64,000 nucleotides of DNA from Takakia lepidozioides (GCA_030704615.1 CM060733.1:23064001-23128000); one strand, 5' to 3'; numbered from the stretch's first letter, positions 7,930 to 40,969 are shown. Notes: generated by a model not told the origin, from the sequence alone. Translations and numbers: made by a program.

Positions 7930-10900
7930 TCAACCTTCCCTCTGCCAATTTAATGGAAAATTGACTAATTGCACTTCATCTTTCAGTGCCCATGCTACTA
8001 CCATATCCAATTGTTCATCTTTACTCAGTTTCATGTGACCTTTGAAAATTGCAGAAGATTTCTTCCCTTTGCAGCCTTTGGTAGCATTCAACTTGTTCTC
8101 CATTACGATGAAATTCGGCAATTCTTTGAGAACCTCCGATGTATTTTGAACTCCCATAGCAAACGTAGCTATAGTGAGTTTATCTTGTCTGGTGAGATTT
8201 TTGAAATCTTCTAAACACCACATACAGTGGATGAGAAATAATCACACCAACACATAACATTATTGAAATACTACATAGTTGTTAAAATCCATCTTACCAT
8301 TTGATGCTTGTTTTCAGTTGTAGGTTTTTCTCTGTTTGAGATGTTTGCCCCTTTTCTACGTGTTCGAGCATCCGATTTGCAATTCTCCTAGAACGCTGCA
8401 TCAAACATAAATAAACTGTGAGAAAACAAGTAATAACATTATACACATATTACAGTTACAGATTCATGATAAAAAAAAACACATCAGTGGCTTAGCGGTG
8501 AGCCACTTGTGTATTGACCTTTAGGTCTAAGGTTCAACCCCCTATCATCTATCTTTCTACCTTCAGACTGGGTTTTGCCCCTATGATAATGGGCTCCACT
8601 GTCGGAAACAAAAGAGAACTAAAAAAGACAAAAAAAAAACAGTATTTAATTTTAATATTTTGAAGGTAGGTCTATGATGGAAGGATACATTTACCTTAAC
8701 AGATGGAGGAAGACAATCTGAAACTTCCATCTCTGTATTACAGTGTTCTTCTCCATCAATGTTCAAAACAGTAAAAATGTTGATGCCCCGCTCTTCATTC
8801 ACCTCATGTACAGTACATTTCTTAATATTAATACAAATCAATAGAACATGTATAAAGAAACAAAGATAAAAATAATAATAACATTCCATCTAAAATACCT
8901 ACATAGTTGTTGAGGTTTTTGTTGTGTGTCCCTTCTCTGTTTGAACTGTTCGCCCCTTCGCAACTTGTTCAAAAGTCTCATTTGCAACTTTCTTACAGCG
9001 CTGCACCATACAAAAAATAGATTAATGTAAGGAAAGATATGATTGAGTAGGTTACTACCAGTGATAACAGCGTTGTACCCTACAAAAAGATGATTAATGT
9101 AAGAAAAGATATGATTGAGTAGGTTGCTACCAGTGAAAAAAATAACTTAAAATATTTAAACAGATATCTACAATTTAATATATATTACCTTCATAGATGG
9201 AGCTGTATTTTGTGCATCAATATTGAGCACCGTAAAAAGGCTGAGGCCTTGTTCTTCAGTGACCACCTGGAAGAATATTCTTAATAGTATTAGTACATAC
9301 CATTAAAATGACACATCTCCTTAAAATCTACCCTCTATTTCTATCTTACAACTAATAGATACAACAAAATATGATTCAAATGAAAACATATAAACAATAT
9401 ACCTCTGTGGTTGACTCTGGATATTTGATACATTATCAAATGCTTTGTTAGCTTTTGTTGAAAAAACCTCATGTAGTCCTCCAGCATTTTTTGGTCTCAT
9501 GTTCCACTCATCATTCTTACATGTCTGTTTCTGGTGGTGTAAATCACTATTGTCGTTTTCGTGCCAATCCCCTTTCTTTCCGTACGTATACCTATTAGAA
9601 AGTATATAAAAATATATAATTTTATATCATATTCATACTAGTATACTATTTATAATAAAGATTTACTCACAAGTACACTTTGTGGAGTTGACTCCAATAG
9701 AATAGTAGTACTGGTATGCTTGAGTACAACCTCTGGAACTTCAATTGTTTCTTCACCCAATAGCTCTTCAAATAGAGCTGGGGAGTTGGCTCCAGCCTTA
9801 CATATGTAGTAGGAATTTCAATTTCATCACCCTGCAAAAATATATTGCAAAAAATAAAGTAATAAAATACTACATATAAGTTTTCCAGACAATATAAACA
9901 AAGAAAACTTGATAATAAAATAGTGAGAGTATTCCATACCTCTGAGAAATCTTTGATCTGGAGTTGTGGATGCTTAAACTGTTCTCCCCTTGGAATATAA
10001 AAATTCCCAACATCCTCAAGAATGTTAATAATCTTCACACTCCACACCTTGTAAGGGTTCAACCTTACAACCTTCAATGGTTTTCCATACCCAGAACAGT
10101 GAGCCTCTTCCACTAGTCAGCCGTGTTGTTTTGTTGAATCGATAAATGATTCGGATAAACACTATGTATCCCTCATATTGAGCCTTGTAGTTGTTGTAGG
10201 TAATTTTAACCCTATCAATGCAAGAGTATAATTACCACTGCTACACAACTCAATACATTTTGCATCTTCTACAGAAGACTCCACCTTGGTTGGAAGCAGT
10301 TTTTTGCGACATTTTGAAGGTGGTTGAAATGTATCTGAAACTGAACCTCCACCATTGCTTTTTTTGAAAGCTTCCCTCTTGACCTTTTTCCCAATCACGT
10401 AGTGTTTTGTTTCCAAAAATGATTTGTAAATATCCTCCACTTTCCACCTCAAAGTGGTTGAAGCTTCTAGAAACACCAAACTGGATAAAGCAGATTCTTT
10501 GTCCTTTATAAAACGTTGTAGTTCTTCTTGGGCTTCTTTGCTATGCCTGAAGTTAGCATTGTAAAAAGACTCAATGACAGGGTCTGTAGTATTTTTAAAC
10601 CAAAGCCGCACCTGAGCTTGATTGAAGTTGAAAACTTGCTGAGCTTGGGGGTGGTATTTAGCTAAATACCTCCTTCCATACATATGACCTTCTTCAAATG
10701 GCACATGTTTGGGACGACCTTTGAATATCATGTCGTATGTAGGACTTGGATCATCTTGAGTCCTACTTGTACTTCTAGGTTCACTTTGTGTCGTTGTGTC
10801 ACTGGATTTTTGTTCTGCCCCAGTCTCGATACATCTACTCGCTTGTTTGCTTCCACCACCATTGACACTTACTTTCTCTGCAATGTCTGTACAATCCACA

Positions 10901-11247
10901 GTGACAGCAGGAATAAGTTCTTCACCTGACAAAACTTTCTGGGCCACTGAGTTTGCTGGACTCTTCAACTCCATTGAAAGATTAATATGACCATCTATAG
11001 GGGTGGTCTTCGACACATTGTATGTAGCAATCCATGATAGTATTGCCTTCAAATGTTTGAGAATCTTCACTCCCAAATCTTTCAGATCTTTCCTTTCAAG
11101 ATCTAACAAATCACCCCCATCAACTTCTGCTTCCACAAATGCTCCAATATAATCTTTACAATCTAAAAACTCTGAAATATACTCTGTCACTTCAAAAACA
11201 GACCACTTCAATACTGTACCTTTAGATGGGTATCCCTCCATGACCAC
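7930..11247 (-). CDS. Multi-exon transposon accessory ORF with N-terminal SAM domain (likely second gene of the CACTA-like element; intactness uncertain)
   Basis: ORF 10162-11247 begins WSVFEVTEYISEFLDCKDYIGAFVEAEVDGGDLLDLERKDLKDLGVKILKHLKAILSWI, a SAM pattern. Further exon-like blocks run down to 7930 between AT-rich introns. Confidence 0.6.
8482..8630 (+). mobile_element. tRNA-derived SINE-like insertion
   Basis: A-box TGGCTTAGCGG and B-box GGTTCAACCCC at tRNA-like spacing, A-rich tail, and flanking direct repeat AAAAAAAAACA (8471-8481, 8631-8641). Confidence 0.6.
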
Positions 11248-11859
11248 TATCTTCAGACACTACTTACATACTATCCTTAGACACTTCCTACAAAAAAACT
11301 ACACTTGCTCTCTATGACTACTCTCCCCCTACATTCCACACATTCCATCGGGAGTGAACATCAAAACTGATAACTAGAACTAAGAAGACAGATACATGGA
11401 AACTAGGGTATCCACTACAAAACCTAAACTGACAAAGGCGGGAAAAAGTATAGTGGATAAGATTTCAATTTGAATATTTTAAATATATATATTTTCCATC
11501 AGTACATTTTAATTTTAAAACATTATTCACTTCTAATGATAAAATAAACTATTTGAATAAAAAAATATTTAAAGTGATCGATTTCCATACTTCTACTGCT
11601 GTATTTTAACTATACAAATGGTAAAATATACTAATTAAATGAATATTTTAATATTATATAATACTATATTATTTATATAAATTTATAGATATTAAAAAAA
11701 CCATTTCAATATTGAGATGGCCATCTCAACCGTTCAAATGATCATCTCAATATTAATTATATGTAGAATTCTTGTATTGTTTTATTTTCAAATTTAGATA
11801 ATTGGTTTGATATTTGTCAATCTGTATATTCCAATGTAAATTTGACAAGTGTCCATGAG

Positions 11860-13974
11860 GGTTTACTGTGAACTTTTCCCGCTTCCACAGGTGCACTTGG
11901 TGAGCTCCCGCCACTCCTTGTCACTCCCACTCCTCATACTCTCGCCTCCCCTTCCTGTACCCCAGCCTCTTTCCACTCTGACCCTTCACACTTATTTTGT
12001 ACTTTTTTTTTTGATGTGATAGAGTTGTTATCTGTAAGCTGTTGAAAAAAAGAGTCAGTATATATGATTTTTAGAGTTCATTTTTTATAACTGAGGTATT
12101 ATTAGATGGATGGTTGAATACATTGAAGTTCTTTCAACTTTTCGGAGTCTAATACCAGACCAGCCAAGTTTTGAGAGTGCTAGCAACACTCACCTGCAAT
12201 GTTGGGTACCTTGTTGGCCACCCGCTGCCCTGCCCACATTTGTGTGGCTGGTTTGCTTTGGGGTTGTTCGTCCTGTGTGCCAGCTCCATGGGGGGTTATT
12301 TTTCCCCCTCCTTTCTAAGGGCCTGAATAATTATTATAGCTCAAACAACACCATTGCATCATGCATATTCTCGATTGTCCTCTTTGGTGGTGGATACCTT
12401 ACTTGCCTTCGGTTTTCTGTATACTCAACTGAAGCACCTACAACACCCCTTGTACTAGTGTTAATTTTTTCAGCCATGTGATGTCTCCTGCAAGCAGAAT
12501 AGCCCCCATCCTTAAGGCCACCAACTTTACACTGCGTCGGGTAATCACCGGTAAAAAGCATCAAACAAGCCCTTATTCTGTACCCAAAAAATTGATCCCA
12601 AAAGTCAGTATACCATCAGAAGTACAAAAAGAAAAGTAAAACTCAAAAAAATATAAAATATCATTCTAATATTTTAAATGAGCCATCTTATTATTGGAAT
12701 GACCATTTCAATAGTTGAAATGGGCCATTTCAATAGTTGAATGGAATGTTTAACTAGTTAACTATCAAACTTAATTATTTCAACTTTAAAACAGATAGTG
12801 TATGGGAAGAGTATTACGAATTGTAGCCCCTGCTTCACACTGCGGAAGGTGTCGGGAAATCAACTTTGATGGGTATCCATACTCAACTTCAAATCCATCC
12901 ACAAAAGCTGCATCAAGTTCTTCAATGAATGGCTCCAAAAAAGGACTCAGCATATTAACTTTTATCTGTTTCACCAAGTTTTGTAGGGAATAAATAAAAC
13001 AGGGATAGGTCCCAAAGAAGATAGTTTTCCACCATTCATAACCACCACTTCGACTGTCCAACTACAGTTGTTTTTGCAGCTTGGAATCCATCCCAATGAG
13101 CCATCAATGCAATATTTCTTGGATCACCCTGTATTAGTTTTCTCTTCCCTGTCACCATTGTTGAACAATCAGGACAAGGAAATATATATTCATTTTTTGG
13201 GGAATCCCACCCATCGAGCATTTCTTTACACTTATAATTTGCAGGAAACGCTCGAAATGTTTTGTGACATGGCGAATTTGGGCAAACCAGTGGGAGTTCC
13301 CATTCAGTAGGAGGATTCCAAAAATCTTGCCACTCCCTCATTTTTGCTCCATCCCAAAATTCTTGGATAGTTTCTAGTTGTTCTTCTGATGTAATTCCCA
13401 ACCATTTGTCGCTGTTTCTCCACGTTGTAAGAAATTCATGGCAATGGGTTCTACTCCGACACAATGCTGCAATCTGGGCAGTGAAAGGTAAGTAATCAAA
13501 AAATAATGCATATTGTCTCCACCTTCCACAGATCACACATTTTTCACAGCAATTTTCACAATCTTTTTTTAAGAAGCTTTACTTGTCGTTCCGCTGGTAA
13601 AACACTTACACTTCAAGATATTTCGACCTTCATAAATATCTTCCTGAGATGGTTGCATGAGGTAAGGGATATGTGGTAAAGTTGATGTTCCAGTACATAA
13701 CTTCCACATGATTGGATTGACCATTCCCAATGAACTGTACATACCTGAAAGTTGTTTGAAAGAGGTTGGTACTTGTAAGCCGTCTAAATCTCCATTCCAG
13801 TCACCTGGTACTTGACAAAGTAATTCCCCCAATGACTTGAACCTGTAATCATCTGTCTGTATTTCACAAGTACTCGTATTTGTCAGTGACTCAAATAATC
13901 TCTTCAACATAAGATCTTGGAGTTCAATGGGAACTTTGTATAAATCCCAATCCGCTTGTATCTGAATAATACGG

Positions 13975-14013
<39 letters not shown>

Positions 14014-14698
14014 GTTTTAGAGTTAGTTTTGATTGAACAGAAACTTCATTTCTAAAATGAAGAGGCGGACTTCTTGTAAAATCCCTTCCATCATGCCCAC
14101 GAAGTAATCTTCCACAATCTATCACCCCATTGAAATCTCCCACATTCGTCATGTGATCACCACCATGAAACCCTAAATCTGTAAAGTCATAGTTCCGGTC
14201 AGAAATTGCATTATCCAACAGAAGAAGTGCTGGTACTCCCATAAATACTCTGTTGAGGGTATCAAGTGCCCTATGTTTATAGAATGTTGAACGACCAACA
14301 ATTTTTTTTCCATCACAAAACCTGCATAAACATAATAATCTATTTCCATCCATGTCTACATTTCTATGTTGTCTTTCCATAGAAGTATCAACATTACTTC
14401 CACCAGCTTCTCCTTGCCCTCCTGTTCGATTATCATCTTCATGTCTTCCCCTGTGTGGTTGATCCTTTCCAAAGTTGACACCTCTATTTCTAACAGATTG
14501 AATACTTTCAGAACTATCGACAATATTCAAGCGATGTTGATAATATGTAGCATCCCTAGCGTAGTATATCTTATTCTCCTGTGAAGCTTTTTTATGTCTA
14601 GAGTATGTACTTAGTGGTATATAATCAAACCCTCCTAGTTTATGGCTACACTTATATGTACAGTCACATCTCACTCTTTTTTTACCCCCACTCATCAT
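11860..14698 (-). mobile_element. CACTA/EnSpm-like (Tnp2/Transposase_21-type) transposase, intron-containing, disrupted
   Basis: Motifs QEFWDGAKMRE, GDPRNIALMAHWDGFQ, FLEPFIEEL..GFEV, LFTGDYPTQCKVGG..GYSACRRH, plus N-terminal CxC modules. No terminal CACTA repeat found. Confidence 0.75.
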
Positions 14699-16650
14699 TC
14701 TAACTCATCTACAAATATGATACAATGGAGTACTTGGGGATGATACATAAATAGTGACATATAAGTTCTTACAAACAAAACATATAACTAAAAGCAAAGT
14801 TTTCTAAGCTTGTGGAGAATAGAATAGAGGGTCTGGAATGAAAATTTTAGAAAACAGAATAATGGAAAATGGAACATAACAGAAAAGGGTAAACATGACA
14901 CCTCAAAAAATCTTACATCGATCTCAAAAAGAATGGAATGATGAAGGCCTACAACAATAGAGATGACAAACTATGATCACTGAGTGAAGCAGCTCCACGC
15001 TTCCGCCACTAAAGCTCGCGCCACTCGAGCACTTTGGGGAAGTTTCACGCACCAAAAATATCTCCAAGTTTCTACTTAGGTGACTACGTGGCTAAATAAC
15101 AAAATTTTATTGGTATGCAGACAACTTTAGATTTTCCACGAATGAGGGTTTGCCAAATCAACCTATCTTATCAACTTTGAAGTATAATATAAAAACTTTC
15201 CGGCTTATAGAATTATCTTTTATCATCTGAAAAATGTTCTCGTATATAAGTTTTTGTACTTCTTGGTTGTCCCGTTGAAGAGCCTTCATTCCCAAATATT
15301 CCCTACATCTCTATGGGAATATATAAGTCCCACTCTTCTATATATGTCTACATGGGAATACCTTGAAAATTCCCAGCGCTTCTAGCAGGGACTATAACAC
15401 AAGCTCTTTGTGTGCAACACCTTGTACTGAAGGATCTCTTGAAGGATTTGTGGGCATTGATATGCAATAAGCTTTCAATTCCAGGTGGTAGATGAGTTTC
15501 TGTTGTTTGTGTCTTCGGTATCCTGACATACCACAGGGTTAGGACTTGGAACGTTGTCATCACACCCACATCTTTAACTTCATGTTAGTCACAATAAAAT
15601 CTAGTTTTCTGATACAAAGGAAAGGAAAGCATATTTTATGACGTCCACAAAAAGCTCAAACAGTTTTTCGGACAAGAGAAAGAAAGAAACAAGAAAGAGA
15701 GATGGACCCTCCACAACCAACCCAAAAGCAACTTTTGCTCAAGGGAGAAGAGAAGAAAGGTATAAAGGAAAAACTCTAATGTCCACAGGAAGCTGAATGA
15801 CTTCACAGAACAGAGGAAAGCATGGTACAGGGAAAAAACTGGGGCCGTCAACAGGCAGCCCAAAAAGTACAATTCAACTTCAAGAGGTTCTCCAAGCTAA
15901 AGGGCCTCATTTAGATATGCCCAAAGAGAAAAATGAAATGAAATGATACTTTATAACGTTTGAGGAAAGCTCAAAGAGCTTATGGGACGAGAAAGCAAGA
16001 CAGTGGGGCCCTCCCGAAGCAGCCCAAAAACTACTAGAAAGAAAAGAACTTTAGTGGAGGGCTAGGAAACCACTAAGATTCATGGAGCAATTGACATGGT
16101 TAGCAATGAGACCAGGAGCCAAATTGCATGACAAGATCAATAACCTAAGCTAAGTTGAATGTTTGATCCCCACATCAATGAGGGAAGAGAACATAGAATT
16201 GTTGTTTGAACTCCTAAAATTTCCTCCCGAACTCAAGTGGTTTGTGGTTCTGGGAATCTCAGGGTGCGGGACTTCTAAATGGAGAGACAAAGGGACATGG
16301 TTCCAGGGACACTTGGATGCTGGGGTTGTGTCCAACCACTGATTCACCTTCATGTCTACCAGGAACCACCCACTCCTTTACTTCGCAACGTGTTCGAAAA
16401 ATCCTACAACTGGTTCCACAAACTTTTCACACGTCTGTGGTAAGTGAGTCATCTTGTGAACTCTGCCGCAAGGGCCTCCTTGCAGATCCATCATCCACAG
16501 AGCCATCCATTGGTCAGTTATGGTCGGTATGAGATTTTGTGGCCGTTTTGGAAACATTGTTGAATCATGTTGGAATTCAGGTCATTGAATACATTTATGC
16601 ATGAGAGTTAGGCCTATTAGCTTATTAATCTGAACGTTTTTTTTTCACAG

Positions 16651-33490: not shown

Positions 33491-34037
33491 GTTTGAGACC
33501 GAAGAGTGGGAGGGGAGGGAGAAGACCTAACAGAAACCCGTCCTGTTACCAGTCAGAGCCAACAGGCCTAGGACGACGGACCATTTAACAGAGATAGAAT
33601 TGTCGTTTGATATGCCAAAGATTCCGGTCAATCATCCATCCATGATGTATTGGATGAGTAGTGCTGATTGAGGATGATACGTCGCGATGGATGGAGAATC
33701 TGGATTCATGTCGGTCGTTGTAACTGGATGGACTAAATCAGCTTTCCATCTGAATGGATGAATGAATGTATAATAAGGGGGCGACAATAATAAAAGCTCC
33801 ATTGAAAAGGAAAAATAGTTTTTAATTCGTGTATTCGTAATTCGTGCCGGCTAACTAACTGAGAAAAGAAACCAAGGACTCAGGTAGTTAGGGTAACCAA
33901 AACGAAAGGAAGGGAAGGGAGGGGATGGGTGTCGTCCAGATGCGGACCGGTTGGGGGAGACGGTGGACGGCGCGGGGCGTCGTTGGACGGAAGCAGAGCG
34001 TTCGTCCACAGAGAGGGCGAGAGAGAGAAGGGCAGCC

Positions 34038-36882
34038 ATGGAGGAGGAGGAGCTGGTGGCTTGCGAGCACCACGACCTGGGCACGCCCGAGAGCCAGCAA
34101 GAGCACCATCACCATCACGATCACACAGTAGATGTCGATGAGGAGATTCTAGGAGGTAAGCTTGAGATCGTGGTGAAGACAGGGGGCCGGGAGCCGGCAA
34201 CAGAGTGGAGCGAAGCGGCGACGTCGGTGTTGATAGCTGCGTTCAGGTATGGTGGTCTTTACTCGCTGAAGAGCGAGGGTTTGGGAGGTGAGCGGGATAG
34301 GATGTGGTTCTTGGTTGTGGGTGGGGGTTCTGCTCGTGGTGCTGAGGTGGCCGTGAAAGGCGCGGCACTGTTGTGGGAGATCGGGGTCTGTTGCCATGTG
34401 TGGAATCAATTCTTGTGTGGCCTGGCCTATTGTGCGCAGGACAAGAAGGGATTAGCCGATGTTCTTTGTGGGGGATATGTGTTTTGGCACCTTTGCGGTT
34501 TGGAGAGAGAGATATTGAAGCCTGGTTTTATGTTGTTGGAAGTTGCTTAGAGGGCCGCTGGGCGTGTTTTCTTGGCTTGTCGCTCTTGGTCGGGAGAATC
34601 TGGGTTTCCGGGACGAGTAAGAGCAGAACTAACGTATTAGGTGACTGGTTGGAGACAGGGATAAATTTCATGCGTTGGACCGCAACAATTTCCGTAGCAA
34701 AGACTGGGCAGACGTAGCCAAGAGTGTGAATGCGCGATGTGGAAATGAGAAGACTCCTAAAACCCAGGAGCAATGCCGCATGAAAGTGGACAGCTTGAAG
34801 AAACGCTATCGACAGGTTTGGAACTTTCTTCATGATTAGACAGAGAAGATTTTTTTCATAATGCCAGGCCTGTTCTTGGCAGGACGGCTTAGGCTAAGGA
34901 CATACACAAGACAAGAAAGAAGGGTATCGCCCCTTAGTCCTGTCATGTCTAGCCGCCTGGATGTACTGGAATCTCCCATCCCAGTAGCATGTGTTTTGTC
35001 GTGACACTGAGTTGGAAATCGAGAAACTGATATCAGCTTGGAGTATGTGTTAGTAGTGTCTTGCTTTCTTGAGGTGTGCTATCCATTGGTGTTCTTTTGA
35101 TGCTCTCAGTCAGACAACGGTCATAGTGAAAAATCCAGAAATCTCTATACTGCATCATACACCAGCTTTTACTGGCTTTGTAAGAACCAAGGAGCTCAGC
35201 CCACGAGTAATGTGTTACTTTGCAGGAGAAAGATAAGCTGGCTGGTAATGTTCCCTGCAAATGGCCTTGGTTTGAGGTCTTGGACGATCTGATAGGTGGC
35301 AGTCCCAAGCAGTCACGGATCGGCTCTGGTCGGAAGCAACGCTACTTACGCTCCCCTACCCAAGGTTATGGTAGTGGGGAATCTCCTCTGTTTCCCTCTC
35401 TGCTGCAATCTTCTTCGTCATTATCTTCTGGATTTATTCTGTTATTGCTGGTGGGCTTTTTCCCCTCCTTCTAGTGATGGTTTCTGTTTTCGGGTCCAGT
35501 TTTTCACTTCATCTCTCAAACACGGTAATGGGTAGATTCATCGTCTGGTCGGCTAAGTGGTTGGTTCATCCAGTTCATTACTTTTTTGTGGTCATTCCTG
35601 ACCAAGATTTGAGTAGTCAGTGCTTTTCTCTTGTCCAAGTCTACCAGCTTATTTGAAAGCAAGACATTGGGTGGCAACGACAATGTAAACTTCTTTAGTT
35701 AGTTACAAATAGAGCAGTACATGTGACCAAGGTGATAGAGCAACCAAAGAGCAACTTCCGTCCACCTACAGCTCAATGGCTTCTGTGTTGGGGTCTGTGC
35801 AGGGATCTCACCAAGTGTGTATCTTAAGAAGAAGTTGGCAAGGGTGGTGAATTTACAGGACGTGGTGGGGCAGGCACTGATGGCAGGGTCATTGGAGGAT
35901 AATATTGTTGCGCTCCTTCACAATTTTTTGGAAGAGGAGACGGCACGAAATTTTGCTAAAAAACTGGCCTCCAGCAAGTATACAGTAGCCACTCTCCTAG
36001 AAATGTCAGAGAGGGAGCTTGATGAAATTTTGGCGGAAGAGTTCCCAGAGGCTGCTAGAGGAGAGAGACGTGGGTTCAAGGCTGCCATCTGGTCCAAGAA
36101 AAGGAAGCTTGCTCAAGGTACAAAATTATGCTCTTGCATTGGGTGGTTGAAGAGGTAGTTACTTGGGTGCCTTTGACAGAACTATTGGGTGATTTGGAAT
36201 TGCAACGCGACATCTGTGCATGGATGTAGGTAATTGTAACAAAGGGGGTATAGCTTCAATTTCACTGTCCCTTGCTCTAAGTATGTGGTTGTGTGGTTAA
36301 TGTGGCAGAGTGTGGAGATGAATTAGATATGGCGAATGCGAGTGGGTCGATCATGGAGATCTCTGACAATTTTGCAAAGAAGGAGAGGAAGTCGGGTTCG
36401 TTTGTACGGTAGCTGTTTTCATGTCAAGTTTAACACGAATTTATCTTTCTTACTGAGAGCTGGTGAAATGCGCCTCGACCCCACTTTATTCTCATTGTTC
36501 AAGGGGACCATGCGTTTTCTGTAACTGTATCATGAGATTTCTGTACTCCTCACTGTAGATGGAAAAGGCTTGAAAATTGTATTCTTATCCTTGAAATCAA
36601 GTGTTCTTTACACAGCTTGGGTCTCTCTGGTTGTCTGACTGTCAGTCTTAGTTACAGGCATTTTGTGCATTGACATTCCCTTGAGCTCTCCACATGTAGT
36701 ATCGCACCGGGGGTGAGAGTCGCATAGACGTGGGGTGGTGTAGTGGGCCAAGGTCAAGGTCTGCTGTCTGCTTGCTGTGTAGTGTGAAGGATCACCATGT
36801 TTTCTTTGAGATCTGTTTAGTAGCAATAGAGATAGATCTACCCTCTGAGTGTGACGATGAAAACACACCAGCTCTTGTCAAG
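34038..36882 (+). CDS. Trihelix (Myb/SANT-like, SIP1/ASIL-type) transcription factor with a LEAFY-like SAM domain; 3' end uncertain
   Basis: Phase-consistent GT-AG exons 34038-34246, 34659-34815, 35226-35364, 35803-36117, 36309-36408 and tentatively 36783-36882. Trihelix: EWSEAATSVLIAAFRDKF..KDWADVAKSVN..KTQEQCRMKVDSLKKRYRQEK..WPWFEVLDDLIG. SAM-like: YTVATLLEMSERELDEIL..GERRGFKAAI. Confidence 0.85.
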
Positions 36883-37265
36883 GTAATGGGTATTTCCTAC
36901 ACACACCAAATGTTTTTGCCAATTACCCAATCTTTGGATAATTACAAAATCCACTGTTCAGCATTTTCAGTACTGCTTTACTAAAGTCTTTTCTGGATTT
37001 CATTGTGCCTGCAAAATCTATCGAGAACTCCTTTTAAGAAGGTTTTCCCAAGCCGACACTGCCACGGTTTACCGATCTCAGATTGGCACAGGCCACCCTT
37101 TCTCAAATAATGAACATTGCCATGGCTCACAGAGAATCCATTCACTCAAATGGTGCCATTGAATGGTACAGATTGTTCCTCCGAAATCACTACAAAAGTG
37201 AGACCAGTTATGACACACTGCATCCTCAAAGCTGATGTGATGTACTCTTCATGCATGTTGCTTAT

Positions 37266-37612
37266 TCACCAGGAATGCCGACAAGGAAAAACCAGTTCTT
37301 GGAAGTGGTGAAAGCAGTTAACAACTGTTTTGCCAACAACATGAACTTGGTTGCCACACACAGGGCTGTGTTGATCAACCAAAATAATTGCCAGCTTCTC
37401 ACTGAGTGGCAAAGCTTTTGCTCCAACCCATGATTCTGTAGAAAGGTCTGTGTCAGGTATGTACCCAGACCCAGACTTTCAGCTCGGCAAGGATTTTCTC
37501 AATCAGTTGCAAATTGGTCTTCTACAATGAAAGTATGCATCCAGTCGTTCTGGCTCCCTTCTGACACCTGTCTTACATTATTTCTCTCACTTGTGGTGCA
37601 TTGTCCCACCTG
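37266..37612 (-). pseudogene. Degenerate E+/DYW deaminase domain downstream of the PPR stop
   Basis: Across frames: RWDNAPQVREIM, HTFIVED, GYIPDT, SEKLAI and FHHFQELVFPCRHSW*, in canonical DYW order with indels and stops. Confidence 0.8.
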
Positions 37613-39877
37613 TCAGCCGTGACATGAGTCAAAAGTGTGACTGGGATCACACTTAAGAAATCCTTTAGCTGCCCTTTCTGCTACCTCCACATTCCCATGA
37701 ATTCTAGAGGCACCAAGCAAGGCCCCCCACACCGCAGCATCTGGTTTGATTGGCATTTTGTGAATGAAGTCCTCTGCCTCCTCCAATAGCCCTGCACGGC
37801 CAAGAAGGTCTACCATGCAGCCAAAATGCTCCAGAGTAGGAGTGAGACTATATTCTCGACTCATGGAATCAAAGTAGTGCCAGCCTTCATCCAGTAGGCC
37901 GGCATGGGTACATGCAGAGAGAACGCATATGAAGATGATTCTGTCTGGCTTCAAGCCTTCTTGTTGCATTTCTTCGAAAAGTTGCAGGGCCTCTGTACTG
38001 CAGCCCTGCTGAGCATACCCTGCAATCATTGCAGTCCATGACCCCACATCTCGTTCATGCATATTGTCAAACACTTGGCGTGCATCGTTTATGTTCCCAC
38101 ATTTGGCGTACATGTCCACAAGGGCATTCTCCAGAATGGTATCTGGTGCGATACCCACTTTCCTAATGTCAGCCTGAACTCTGATACCCTTTCCCAGGGC
38201 TGACAGACCGGCACACGCATTGAGAACACAAGTGAATGTGACCTTGTCAGGCGTCTCTCCTGCGCATATCATCTGCTCATAGATCTCCAAAGCCTGCCTG
38301 CCATACCCATGCTGAGCATATCCGGCAATCATTGCATTCCATGTGACCACATCTCGTTGACACATTTTGTCAAACACTTGCCGCGCATCTTTTATGCTTC
38401 CACATTTGGCATACATGTCAATAAGGGCATTCTCCAGAATGACATCTGCTGCGATTTCTGCTTTCATGATGTCAGCCTGGACCTCTATGCCCTTTTCCAG
38501 GGCTGCCAGGTTTGCACACACGTTGAGAACACAAATGAACGTGACCTTGTCAGGCAACACCCCTTCCCGTATCATTTGCTCATACGTCTCCAAAGCCTCC
38601 CTACCACACCCATGCTGAGCATATCCTGTGATCATTACACTCCATGAGACCACATCTCGATGGGCCATCTGGTCGAACACTTGACGCGCCTCCTTTGAAC
38701 TGCCCCAGTTGGCATACATCACAATTAGGTTATTCTCCAGAATGATATCCGGTACAATTCTAGCTTTGATGATGTCAGCATGGATCTCCCTTCCCTTCTC
38801 CAGGCTGTCACACGCATTGAGAATGGAAATGAACGTGACCTTGTTAGGCACCATCCCTTCCTGTTTCATTAGCTCAAACATTTCAAAAGCCTCCCTACTG
38901 CACCCATGCTGAGCATATCCTGCAATCATTGCGCTCCATGAAATTACATTTCGTTCAGCCATATTGTCAAATACCTGACGTGCATTCTTCATGTCTCCAC
39001 ATTTGGCATACATATCAGCAAGGGCAGTCTCCACAATGATATCTGGAGCAATGGCACATTTCATGATGTCAGAATGAACCTCTTTGCCCTTTTCCAGGCA
39101 ACCTAGTCTGGCACATGCATTGAAAACACAAATAAATGTGACCTTGTCTGGCACAATCCCTTGCCGTATCATTTGCTCATACATCTTGAAAGCCTCCATT
39201 CCACACCCATGCTGAGTATATCCTTTGATCATTGTATTCCATGAGACCACATCTCGTTGAGCCATACTATCAAAAACTTGACGAGCATCCTTCAAACTCC
39301 CGCATTTGGCATACATATGAACAAGGGTATTCTCCAAGTTAACATATGAGGCAATTCCAGCTTTGACTATATAAGCATGGACCCCTTTGCCATATTCCAG
39401 GGCTCCTAGGCTGGCGCATGCCTTGAGAATGCAAATGAACGTCACCTTGTTAGGCATCACCCCTTCCCTTACCATTTGCTCATATAGTTTGAAGGCATCC
39501 CTACCACACCCATGCTTAGCATATGCTGCTATCATTGTATTCCATGCAAACATATCTCTTTCAGGCAATTCGTCAAACACTCGGCGTGCATCCATCACAC
39601 TCCCACACTTTGTATACATGTTGACAAGGGTGTTGACTAGAAAGATGTTTGGCTTGAATTTACTTTTGATTATGTGAGAATGCACCTGCTTTCCCTCTGC
39701 TAGGCCCTGCACGTTGATACACTCCCACAATAGAAGAACATAAGTATCAGTGTCTGCCAGAATGCCTGGTTGGTTCAAAATGTTGAGTGCCTCTTGAAGT
39801 TGCCCTCCCCTGCATAGTGTCCCTATGTCACCACATTGTGCTTGACCTTGTATCATGGCAACCGGCTTTGCTTTCAC
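37613..39877 (-). CDS. PLS-class pentatricopeptide repeat protein with truncated E domain (organellar RNA-editing factor type)
   Basis: Intronless ORF with repeated P-L-S triplets (ALVDMYAKCG..ARQVFD, DVVSWNAMIAGYAQHG, PDKVTFICVLNACA) ending HFGCMVDLLGRAG..WGALLGASRIHGN. First ATG at 39856; the true start is uncertain. Confidence 0.95.
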   Translation of the reverse strand: MKAKPVAMIQGQAQCGDIGTLCRGGQLQEALNILNQPGILADTDTYVLLLWECINVQGLAEGKQVHSHIIKSKFKPNIFLVNTLVNMYTKCGSVMDARRVFDELPERDMFAWNTMIAAYAKHGCGRDAFKLYEQMVREGVMPNKVTFICILKACASLGALEYGKGVHAYIVKAGIASYVNLENTLVHMYAKCGSLKDARQVFDSMAQRDVVSWNTMIKGYTQHGCGMEAFKMYEQMIRQGIVPDKVTFICVFNACARLGCLEKGKEVHSDIMKCAIAPDIIVETALADMYAKCGDMKNARQVFDNMAERNVISWSAMIAGYAQHGCSREAFEMFELMKQEGMVPNKVTFISILNACDSLEKGREIHADIIKARIVPDIILENNLIVMYANWGSSKEARQVFDQMAHRDVVSWSVMITGYAQHGCGREALETYEQMIREGVLPDKVTFICVLNVCANLAALEKGIEVQADIMKAEIAADVILENALIDMYAKCGSIKDARQVFDKMCQRDVVTWNAMIAGYAQHGYGRQALEIYEQMICAGETPDKVTFTCVLNACAGLSALGKGIRVQADIRKVGIAPDTILENALVDMYAKCGNINDARQVFDNMHERDVGSWTAMIAGYAQQGCSTEALQLFEEMQQEGLKPDRIIFICVLSACTHAGLLDEGWHYFDSMSREYSLTPTLEHFGCMVDLLGRAGLLEEAEDFIHKMPIKPDAAVWGALLGASRIHGNVEVAERAAKGFLKCDPSHTFDSCHG

Positions 39878-40461: not shown

Positions 40462-40969
40462 CTTGTTTCCAGTCAGTGACATGGGGGAGGACATCTTGGA
40501 TGACCTCAAGGGTCTACCCACTCTCGGCACTAGACTGAAATTTAAACTCAGGGCAGGAAGCCTACCTTTGAACAGCAAACAGAAGCAGAGAGGAAAGGGA
40601 GAGTGCAATTGCCCGCTGTGTGGGCAATCTGAAGACAGTATTCACTTTCTGATACACTGTCTGGGGTTCTCTCACCAAAGAGACGCTCTCTTCAATTCTA
40701 TCAAGGGAATTGTGCCTGTACCCCTGTTTAACAACTTTGAAAGTCTCGAGGCTGAGCCAAAAGCCCAGGCCCTCCTGAGGCCTAGTTTTTGGGCAAATCA
40801 CACACAGCAGATTGATGCTTGTGTGAAGGGATTTCTAGAGGATATCTGGAAAACCCGGATTAATTCTATATATGATGGTAAGTCACACTACCAACGTCAG
40901 CCCCTGACAGAGGTAGGTTCTGTCCCTTTTGTTCCCGCTCAAACTGGGCGCGGGGTCTTATGAGTACAA
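40462..40969 (+). mobile_element. 5'-truncated LINE (ORF2 C-terminal CCHC region plus 3' tail)
   Basis: LKFKLRAGSLPL..CPLCGQSEDSIHFLIHC; 14-bp TSD TCTCTCAACCTGAA (40448-40461, 40970-40983) at the edge of a (CT)n run. Confidence 0.85.

What the first reader, a model, noticed from the sequence alone, without database searches (positions are those of the whole stretch)
34038..36882. Trihelix DNA-binding domain fused to a LEAFY-type SAM oligomerisation domain
Seen: exons 1-3 encode a trihelix domain, and the symmetric phase-1/phase-1 exon 35803-36117 encodes KKLASSKYTVATLLEMSERELDEILAEEFPEAARGERRGFKAAIWSKKRKL. Established: the LEAFY N-terminal SAM reads roughly KIAELGFTVSTLxxMxxEELDDMM..LLVGERYGIKAAVRAERRRL, drives head-to-tail oligomerisation, and is normally paired with the LFY DNA-binding domain. 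SIP1-type trihelix proteins usually carry a coiled coil at this position. Inference: exon shuffling produced a transcription factor that polymerises like LFY but binds GT elements, and it may hetero-oligomerise with LFY. It could also inform the origin of the LFY SAM. I cannot say whether this architecture is already published.
Basis: partly seen in the sequence, partly recalled or inferred. Interest (0 to 1): 0.82.

Follow-up and report, generated by a model that had tools for sequence, protein, structure and literature searches.

The report
Moss trihelix factor with LEAFY-type SAM
This is a real, expressed moss gene that joins a trihelix DNA-binding domain to a self-association (SAM) domain of the kind so far described only in the plant developmental regulator LEAFY; it is conserved across mosses, sits unnamed in public protein sets, and no paper I could search describes it.

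Summary
Transcript contigs from two studies splice five exons (34038-34246, 34659-34815, 35226-35364, 35803-36117, 36309-36412) into one 307-codon frame. Exon 2 passes Pfam Myb_DNA-bind_4 (32.5 bits). Exon 4 passes Pfam SAM_LFY (28.4 bits, cutoff 25.2), while the best generic SAM model reaches 14.6 bits. In the PDB, the Ginkgo LEAFY SAM (4UDE) is the only significant sequence hit (family profile E 5.6e-6). It is also by far the best structural match (Z 12.2, 1.3 A over 72 residues; next SAM Z 7.3). Orthologues with both domains exist in Sphagnum, Ceratodon and Physcomitrium, all unnamed, and a full-length spliced P. patens mRNA contig carries the fusion. The SAM fold evolves at dN/dS of about 0.05. 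A liverwort has two copies of the SAM exon plus tail, with no trihelix nearby. Four of five LEAFY interface residues are kept; the fifth, R112, is W. A three-copy model gives a head-to-tail chain (0.40 against 0.00 for controls), which is support, not proof. Binding to LEAFY, the DNA target and the origin from LEAFY are untested. The scan had not noted this gene before, but it holds unchecked notes of other LEAFY-type SAM pieces in this genome.

The parts
34021..34037 (+). 5' UTR, at least as far as the transcript contigs reach
   Evidence: The contigs of X2 begin at 34021 and those of X1 at 34033.
34038..34246 (+). Exon 1 coding part: Met, His/Glu-rich low-complexity N-terminus, and first helix of the trihelix (EPATEWSEAATSVLIAAF)
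   Evidence: Joint 34246|34659 with GT..AG in both runs. 54% identity to Sphagnum P0001 residues 43-92.
34659..34815 (+). Exon 2 (157 nt): helices 2-3 of the trihelix domain
   Evidence: Pfam Myb_DNA-bind_4 32.5 bits against a cutoff of 27. Joints seen in both runs. The matching exon in Physcomitrium is about the same size: mRNA block 1306-1465, 160 nt including a few bases shared with neighbouring blocks.
35226..35364 (+). Exon 3: fourth amphipathic helix of the trihelix (KWPWFEVLDDLIG) and a basic linker
   Evidence: Joints 34815|35226 and 35364|35803. In orthologue P0001 the Pfam match runs 79-168 and covers this part.
35365..35802 (+). Intron 3, retained in part of the transcripts; alternative donor after 35450
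   Evidence: Unspliced contigs 35336-35830 (X2) and 35422-35830 (X1). Joint 35450|35803 in X1 only. By my reading of the frame, both variants end the frame before the SAM domain.
35803..36117 (+). Exon 4 (315 nt, phase 1 to phase 1): linker plus the complete LEAFY-type SAM domain
   Evidence: Pfam SAM_LFY 28.4 bits, E 1.6e-6, cutoff 25.2. 4UDE is the top PDB hit by sequence. The homologous exon is the same size in Sphagnum and Physcomitrium.
35886..36116 (+). Core of the SAM fold: five helices, residues 28-104 of the exon-4 translation
   Evidence: AlphaFold2 pLDDT above 90 with five helices. VIA-align Z 12.2, rmsd 1.3 A over 72 residues to 4ude_B. dN/dS about 0.05.
36309..36412 (+). Exon 5 coding part: conserved C-terminal tail (SGSIMEISDNFAKKERKSGSFVR) and stop TAG 36410-36412
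   Evidence: Joint 36117|36309 in both runs. Translation. 85% identity to the C-terminus of Ceratodon P0038.
36413..36614 (+). 3' UTR, at least to 36614
   Evidence: The X1 contig runs unspliced from 36307 to 36614.

Best explanation
A five-exon, expressed moss gene (307 codons) encodes a nuclear transcription factor with four parts. These are a His/Glu-rich N-terminus, one SIP1-like trihelix (Myb/SANT-like) DNA-binding domain, a short basic linker, and a five-helix SAM domain of the LEAFY type, followed by a conserved 33-residue tail. The SAM domain lies in one symmetric 315-nt exon, at the place where other trihelix proteins carry a dimerising coiled coil. Shown: the splicing, both domain identities, the conservation of the architecture across mosses, and strong purifying selection. 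Inferred: the SAM domain links copies head-to-tail through mid-loop and end-helix surfaces, as in LEAFY. Several trihelix domains would then bind clustered weak sites cooperatively. The family most likely arose when a SAM-plus-tail gene, still free-standing in a liverwort, was joined to trihelix exons in the moss lineage.
For: - **Splicing:** GT..AG joints for all four introns in contigs of two runs from two studies. An uninterrupted 414-codon ORF lies on a P. patens mRNA contig, L005, that maps in six blocks to the genome locus L004.
- **Domains:** Myb_DNA-bind_4 scores 32.5 bits on exon 2 alone and 57.1 bits on orthologue P0001. SAM_LFY scores 28.4 to 29.9 bits, above the 25.2 cutoff. 10 of 11 family members match SAM_LFY; 7 match SAM_KSR1 only weakly and 1 matches SAM_1.
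- **PDB sequence search:** 4UDE (Ginkgo LFY SAM) is the only significant hit, E 0.0093 for the single sequence and 5.6e-6 for the family profile.
- **Structure:** residues 28-104 fold with pLDDT above 90 as five helices. The two top Foldseek hits are the 4UDE chains. VIA-align gives Z 12.2, rmsd 1.3 A over 72 residues, against Z 7.3 for the next SAM.
- **Conservation:** orthologues with both Pfam domains occur in Sphagnum species, Ceratodon purpureus and Physcomitrium patens. dN/dS of the SAM fold is 0.046-0.047, with synonymous sites saturated.
- **Interface residues:** those named for LFY in PMC4844672 are T72, T75, E83 and R116. They correspond to T60, T63, E71 and R100 of the exon-4 translation, by the alignments.
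- **Self-association model:** three copies score 0.40 against 0.00 for the best of 3 controls. The tool's mark was reached by 21 of 30 proteins solved as pairs of one chain and 0 of 23 solved as single chains. The runs agree in at least 86% of contacts and partner pLDDT is at least 86. The chain is head-to-tail, with residues 57-67, 71, 75 and 78-79 touching 40-46 and 84-97.
- **Liverwort copies:** Calypogeia fissa proteins P0007 and P0048 carry the SAM exon and tail. No trihelix was found in the 8-10 kb upstream by tblastn or a family HMM.
Against: - The LFY end-helix residue R112, whose change to E abolishes LFY oligomerisation (PMC4844672), is W in all moss members. The end-helix surface is therefore not the LFY one.
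- The complex model may pass from memory of 4UDE. It used three copies, while the calibration used two.
- No DNA-binding or oligomerisation experiment exists.
- The exon 3-exon 4 joint in the window's species rests on short unitigs and coexists with intron retention.
- The SIP1 clade assignment is from residue patterns only, not a tree.
- The liverwort genes could have lost trihelix exons, rather than mosses having gained them.
Confidence: 0.7

Rival explanations
1. The gene and both domains are real, but the SAM domain does not polymerise. It serves as a monomeric or one-sided docking module for another protein, for example capping or recruiting LEAFY or a co-regulator through its intact mid-loop face.
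For: R112 of LFY is replaced by W in every moss member, and by R, Q or G in the distant members. The mid-loop residues T, T and E are conserved. Many SAM domains do not polymerise (established knowledge, as summarised in PMC4844672).
Against: The three-copy model places both faces in contact and passes its controls, 0.40 against 0.00. W96 lies in the predicted contact. Both faces are under strong constraint.
Confidence: 0.22
2. The LFY likeness is a chance or convergent match of a generic helical or SAM region, and says nothing of a specific relation to the LEAFY SAM.
For: The single-sequence scores are modest: 28.4 bits in Pfam and E 0.0093 against 4UDE. Identity to 4UDE is only about 26%. 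The structure model could lean on 4UDE from training.
Against: The family profile raises the 4UDE match to E 5.6e-6, and no other SAM chain among 177,635 PDB sequences is hit. 10 of 11 members hit SAM_LFY. The structural Z of 12.2 stands about 5 units above every other SAM.
Confidence: 0.04
3. The fusion is a gene-model or assembly artefact: two neighbouring genes, a trihelix gene and a small SAM gene, joined only by read-through or mis-assembled contigs.
For: The exon 3-exon 4 joint is carried by unitigs of only 57 letters. Intron 3 is also found unspliced. A liverwort has the SAM part as a separate gene.
Against: The same joint is seen in two studies. One P. patens mRNA contig carries the whole 414-codon ORF, and the index lists that protein in 74 blocks of the collection, 71 of them with contigs under 2 kb. 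Independent annotations in four moss genera give the same architecture. The frame is kept across the joint in all of them.
Confidence: 0.02

Closest known systems
LEAFY/FLORICAULA N-terminal SAM domain (Pfam SAM_LFY PF01698; structure 4UDE, Sayou et al. 2016, PMC4844672)
   Same: Five-helix SAM fold. Passes the Pfam cutoff. It is the best PDB match by both sequence and structure. Mid-loop residues T72, T75 and E83 and end-helix residue R116 are kept. A head-to-tail chain is predicted.
   Different: About 26% identity. R112 is W. The domain sits C-terminal to a trihelix domain instead of N-terminal to the LFY DNA-binding domain. No C_LFY_FLO domain is present, so the protein is not a LEAFY family member.
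SIP1-clade trihelix factors (ASIL1/ASIL2, 6b-interacting protein 1)
   Same: A single Myb_DNA-bind_4 trihelix with W, W and an aliphatic residue in the three helices, plus a fourth amphipathic helix.
   Different: The C-terminal long helix or coiled coil said to mediate dimerisation (PMC6686422) is replaced by a SAM domain. The third-helix residue is V, not I. Clade placement was not tested by a tree.
SAM/PNT-containing transcription factors of animals (ETS family TEL/Yan; polyhomeotic)
   Same: The same logic: a DNA-binding or chromatin protein coupled to a head-to-tail SAM polymer. The polymerising SAMs of Caskin, tankyrase, PHC3 and BICC1 are the next structural matches.
   Different: No sequence relation beyond the fold (Z about 7). 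A different DNA-binding domain and a different kingdom.
Calypogeia fissa small SAM proteins (P0007, P0048)
   Same: Homologous SAM exon with the same 5' border (SVYL...) and a similar tail; 37-43% identity.
   Different: No trihelix exons within 8-10 kb upstream. Position 112 is R or Q, not W. Only 130-159 residues long.

Membership tests
LEAFY-type SAM domain (Pfam SAM_LFY, PF01698) | Score at or above Pfam's gathering cutoff (25.2 bits) | tested here: met
   28.4 bits, E 1.6e-6 for exon 4. 28.8 and 29.9 bits for P0001 and P0002. 10 of 11 members match.
LEAFY-type SAM domain (Pfam SAM_LFY, PF01698) | Five-helix SAM fold closest to the solved LFY SAM (4UDE) | tested here: met
   Model pLDDT above 90 for residues 28-104. 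4ude_B gives Z 12.2, rmsd 1.3 A over 72 residues, against Z 7.3 for the next SAM. 4UDE is the only significant PDB sequence hit.
LEAFY-type SAM domain (Pfam SAM_LFY, PF01698) | Mid-loop surface residues T72, T75 and E83 (AtLFY numbering, PMC4844672) | tested here: met
   T60, T63 and E71 of the exon-4 translation align to them. They are conserved in all the near-full-length moss members; the outliers P0004 and P0006 differ at some of them.
LEAFY-type SAM domain (Pfam SAM_LFY, PF01698) | End-helix surface residue R112 | tested here: not met
   W96 in the window and in all moss members; R, Q or G in the distant members.
LEAFY-type SAM domain (Pfam SAM_LFY, PF01698) | End-helix surface residue R116 | tested here: met
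   R100 aligns to it and is conserved in mosses.
LEAFY-type SAM domain (Pfam SAM_LFY, PF01698) | Head-to-tail oligomerisation in solution | tested here: inconclusive
   In silico only. Score 0.40 against 0.00 for the best of 3 controls. The mark was reached by 21 of 30 proteins solved as pairs of one chain and 0 of 23 solved as single chains. The pass may come from memory of 4UDE.
LEAFY/FLORICAULA transcription factors | C-terminal LFY DNA-binding domain (C_LFY_FLO, PF17538) | tested here: not met
   No such hit in any exon of the window or in the full-length orthologue P0001. Precomputed Pfam for six orthologue clusters lists only PF13837 and PF01698.
Trihelix (GT factor) family | Myb_DNA-bind_4 (PF13837) domain above the cutoff | tested here: met
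   32.5 bits on exon 2 alone, cutoff 27. 57.1 bits over residues 79-168 of P0001.
Trihelix SIP1 clade | Third conserved tryptophan replaced by isoleucine (PMC6686422) | tested here: inconclusive
   By my reading of the helix-3 sequence CRMKVDSLKKRY, the position holds V. That is aliphatic like I, but no clade tree was built.
Trihelix SIP1 clade | C-terminal long helix or coiled coil for dimerisation | tested here: not met
   The region after the trihelix folds as a five-helix SAM bundle, followed by a 33-residue tail.
Trihelix (GT factor) family | Binding to GT-type DNA elements | not testable with these tools
   Needs DAP-seq, EMSA or ChIP.

The most novel reading that the evidence does not exclude
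Mosses have a second transcription-factor family that polymerises through a LEAFY-type SAM domain, and its conserved mid-loop face lets it co-assemble with LEAFY itself. Trihelix and LEAFY DNA-binding domains would then be mixed in one oligomer, so that LEAFY action (in P. patens, the first zygotic division) is tuned by a partner that reads different DNA sites. The free-standing liverwort SAM proteins and the SAM-less splice forms would act as natural caps of such polymers.
Probability: 0.15. Interest if true: 0.85.

Novelty: new variant of a known kind. Interest (0 to 1): 0.62.

Why it matters
The paper that solved the LEAFY SAM structure reported that the LFY N-terminus has no sequence homology with other SAM domains (PMC4844672). 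Here is a conserved, strongly constrained non-LEAFY family that carries that domain type, joined to a different DNA-binding domain. This gives three things. First, it is a natural domain-swap experiment on what SAM oligomerisation adds to a transcription factor. Second, it is a candidate partner or competitor of LEAFY in bryophytes. Third, it is an outgroup for asking where the LEAFY SAM came from. The family is present in Physcomitrium patens, where gene targeting is routine, so all of this can be tested directly. A practical point: surveys that collect LFY homologues with PF01698 alone will pick up these trihelix genes.

Tried and rejected
rejected. There is no transcript cover, and the contigs read through to the stop at 36410-36412.
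- **Splice donor at 36395/36396:** considered from the sequence and rejected for the same reason.
- **Word-index searches:** a search with the trihelix part of P0001 returned only the same six moss clusters. It therefore gave no information on the trihelix clade or on vascular-plant relatives. A search with the SAM alignment added only fragments and a second Calypogeia protein.
- **Exhaustive phmmer with exon 4:** only 7 representatives at E up to 0.001 among 1.84 billion. LFY itself lies below that threshold, so absence from other plant lineages holds only for close relatives.
- **Trihelix exons upstream of the liverwort and L002 loci:** none found by tblastn or a family HMM run without filters.
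- **Literature:** seven searches (trihelix + SAM domain + LEAFY; the LFY SAM paper itself; trihelix + sterile alpha motif; SAM_LFY; PF01698; trihelix + SIP1 + moss + SAM; plant SAM-domain proteins) found no paper describing the architecture. The LFY evolution papers and the trihelix evolution paper that I opened do not mention it.
- **Earlier scan notes by sequence:** blank.
- **Not done:**
  - The window's own exons were searched one by one by reference and never joined. Full-length checks used natural orthologues (P0001, P0040) and the P. patens mRNA contig.
  - No LFY sequence was available by reference. So there was no tree of SAM_LFY domains, no profile-profile comparison with LFY, and no LFY co-complex model.

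Full report
**What is in the sequence**

- Reading 33800-37200 gives a + strand gene with canonical GT..AG introns.
- I laid the contigs of two public runs from two studies on 33500-37600. The runs are labelled 'RNA?' and hold about 45% of the sampled words, which fits exons only.
- The contigs show joints 34246|34659, 34815|35226, 35364|35803 and 36117|36309. They then run without a break from 36309 to 36614.
- The coding exons are therefore 34038-34246, 34659-34815, 35226-35364, 35803-36117 and 36309-36412. That makes 307 codons, ending at TAG 36410-36412.
- The exon 3-exon 4 joint, which links the two domains, is seen in both runs, but only in short unitigs (27+30 letters).
- Contigs that retain intron 3 (35336-35830) are also present. 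One run has an alternative donor after 35450.
- By my reading of the frame, both variants stop before the SAM domain. SAM-less products may therefore exist.

**Method note**

Every full-length statement rests on natural orthologues and on a Physcomitrium mRNA contig.

**Domain identities**

- *Trihelix.* Exon 2 alone passes Pfam Myb_DNA-bind_4 (32.5 bits, cutoff 27). In the Sphagnum orthologue P0001 the same model scores 57.1 bits over residues 79-168.
- *SAM, by Pfam.* Exon 4 passes SAM_LFY (28.4 bits, E 1.6e-6, cutoff 25.2). The best generic SAM model, SAM_KSR1, reaches 14.6 bits. Across 11 family members, 10 match SAM_LFY, 7 match SAM_KSR1 weakly and 1 matches SAM_1.
- *SAM, by PDB sequence.* The Ginkgo LFY SAM, 4UDE, is the top hit for the single sequence (E 0.0093). 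It is the only significant hit for the family profile (E 5.6e-6, next 0.12).
- *SAM, by structure.* An AlphaFold2 model built on the family alignment folds residues 28-104 of the exon-4 translation with pLDDT above 90, as five helices.
  - Foldseek ranks the two 4UDE chains first, followed by polymerising SAM domains.
  - VIA-align gives 4ude_B Z 12.2, rmsd 1.3 A over 72 residues. The next SAM scores Z 7.3.
- *Not LEAFY.* No LFY DNA-binding domain is present. The protein is not a LEAFY.

**Relatives**

- An exhaustive phmmer search of 1.84 billion representatives with exon 4 found only 7 at E up to 0.001.
- The best is a 345-residue Sphagnum compactum protein with both domains.
- Word-index searches and cluster look-ups add several more, all 'hypothetical', 'unnamed' or 'Myb/SANT-like domain-containing'. 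All carry precomputed PF13837 plus PF01698:
  - several Sphagnum species;
  - Ceratodon purpureus M758_3G167500 (425 aa);
  - Physcomitrium patens (414 aa).
- In P. patens a 2276-nt Logan contig (L005) carries the whole 414-codon ORF uninterrupted. It maps in six blocks onto the genome locus L004.
- The index lists that protein in 74 blocks of the collection, 71 of them with contigs under 2 kb. The fused mRNA is thus independently shown in a second species.
- The SAM exon is about 315 nt in the window, in Sphagnum and in Physcomitrium.
- Its SAM fold has dN/dS of 0.046-0.047, with synonymous sites saturated.
- The window's sequence matches none of these exactly. It is 88% identical to Sphagnum, 87% to Ceratodon and 78% to Physcomitrium in exon 4. 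It therefore comes from another moss.
- An earlier scan note suggests Takakia. I did not test that.

**Homologues without a trihelix**

- The liverwort Calypogeia fissa has two paralogues, P0007 (130 aa) and P0048 (159 aa).
- Both carry the homologous SAM exon, with the same 5' border (SVYL...) and a similar tail. Each lies next to a thiolase gene.
- tblastn and an unfiltered family HMM find no trihelix in the 8-10 kb upstream.
- A further distant member, P0006 on L002, is similar.
- So the SAM-plus-tail unit exists on its own. Either mosses joined it to trihelix exons or liverworts lost them.
- The symmetric phase-1 exon fits exon shuffling. The direction is not shown, and neither is a direct derivation from LFY.

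**How it probably works**

- Sayou et al. (PMC4844672) showed that the LFY SAM forms head-to-tail oligomers. These join a mid-loop surface (T72, T75, E83) to an end-helix surface (R112, R116). T75E or R112E abolishes the oligomers.
- By the alignments, the window's protein keeps T60, T63, E71 and R100. It has W96 in place of R112, as do all moss members.
- A three-copy complex model passed its controls. The score was 0.40 against 0.00 for the best of 3 controls.
  - The mark was reached by 21 of 30 proteins solved as pairs of one chain and 0 of 23 solved as single chains.
  - The runs agree in at least 86% of contacts, and partner pLDDT is at least 86.
- The modelled chain is head-to-tail. Residues 57-67, 71, 75 and 78-79 of one copy touch 40-46 and 84-97 of the next. 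This places the equivalents of T72, T75, E83 and R112 in the contact.
- The tool warns that a pass may come from memory of a solved relative, and that three copies differ from its calibration. This is support, not proof.
- In other trihelix proteins a C-terminal long helix or coiled coil is said to mediate dimerisation (PMC6686422). Here a SAM domain sits in that place.
- I therefore infer a trihelix factor whose self-association module has been exchanged for a polymerising one. That would favour cooperative binding to clustered sites.
- The main rival, a one-sided or non-polymerising docking SAM, remains open because of R112W.
- Hetero-association with LFY could not be tested.

**Novelty**

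- The architecture is visible in public protein sets through automatic Pfam labels.
- None of seven full-text searches found a paper that describes it.
- The LFY evolution and trihelix evolution papers I opened do not mention it either.
- I rate this a new variant of known kinds (trihelix factors; SAM-coupled transcription factors), real and conserved, with a directly testable link to LEAFY biology in a tractable model moss.

**Earlier scan notes**

These notes are unchecked. They mention two other items in this genome: a LEAFY-type SAM spliced to an F-box/kelch protein, and a LEAFY SAM-only fragment judged a pseudogene. If they hold, LFY-type SAM modules have moved more than once in this lineage.

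Noticed in passing
window 37613-39877 (- strand): Intronless P-type pentatricopeptide-repeat gene, a 754-codon ORF (Pfam PPR_2 377 bits). It converges on the 3' end of the trihelix-SAM gene. Low-depth transcript contigs cover 37062-37600.
   Followed up: partly
window 35365-35802: Intron 3, between the DNA-binding and SAM parts, is retained in contigs of both runs, and an alternative donor after 35450 shifts the frame. Both would give SAM-less trihelix products. Sphagnum magellanicum has three annotated isoforms of the orthologue (P0011, P0013, P0015), which differ in the first exon and in the exon-3 donor.
   Followed up: partly
window 40463-40963 (+ strand): A 166-codon ORF with a Cys/His-rich stretch (CNCPLCG...HFLIHC) and no Pfam hit. 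It looks like the tail of a retroelement protein, but this is unverified.
   Followed up: partly
L001 7857-8862 and L003 10001-11610 (Calypogeia fissa, one 14.8-Mb contig, about 0.55 Mb apart): Two paralogous small SAM_LFY-like genes, each next to a thiolase gene, which suggests a segmental duplication. Retroelement debris lies upstream of the L001 copy.
   Followed up: partly
window 34038-34160 and orthologues P0036-P0040: All family members carry a His-rich, acidic low-complexity N-terminus of very variable length (about 40 residues here, about 150 in Physcomitrium and Ceratodon). Its role is unknown.
   Followed up: no
window 8001-16000: A block of low G+C (33-38%, against 43-52% elsewhere in the window). 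I did not examine it.
   Followed up: no
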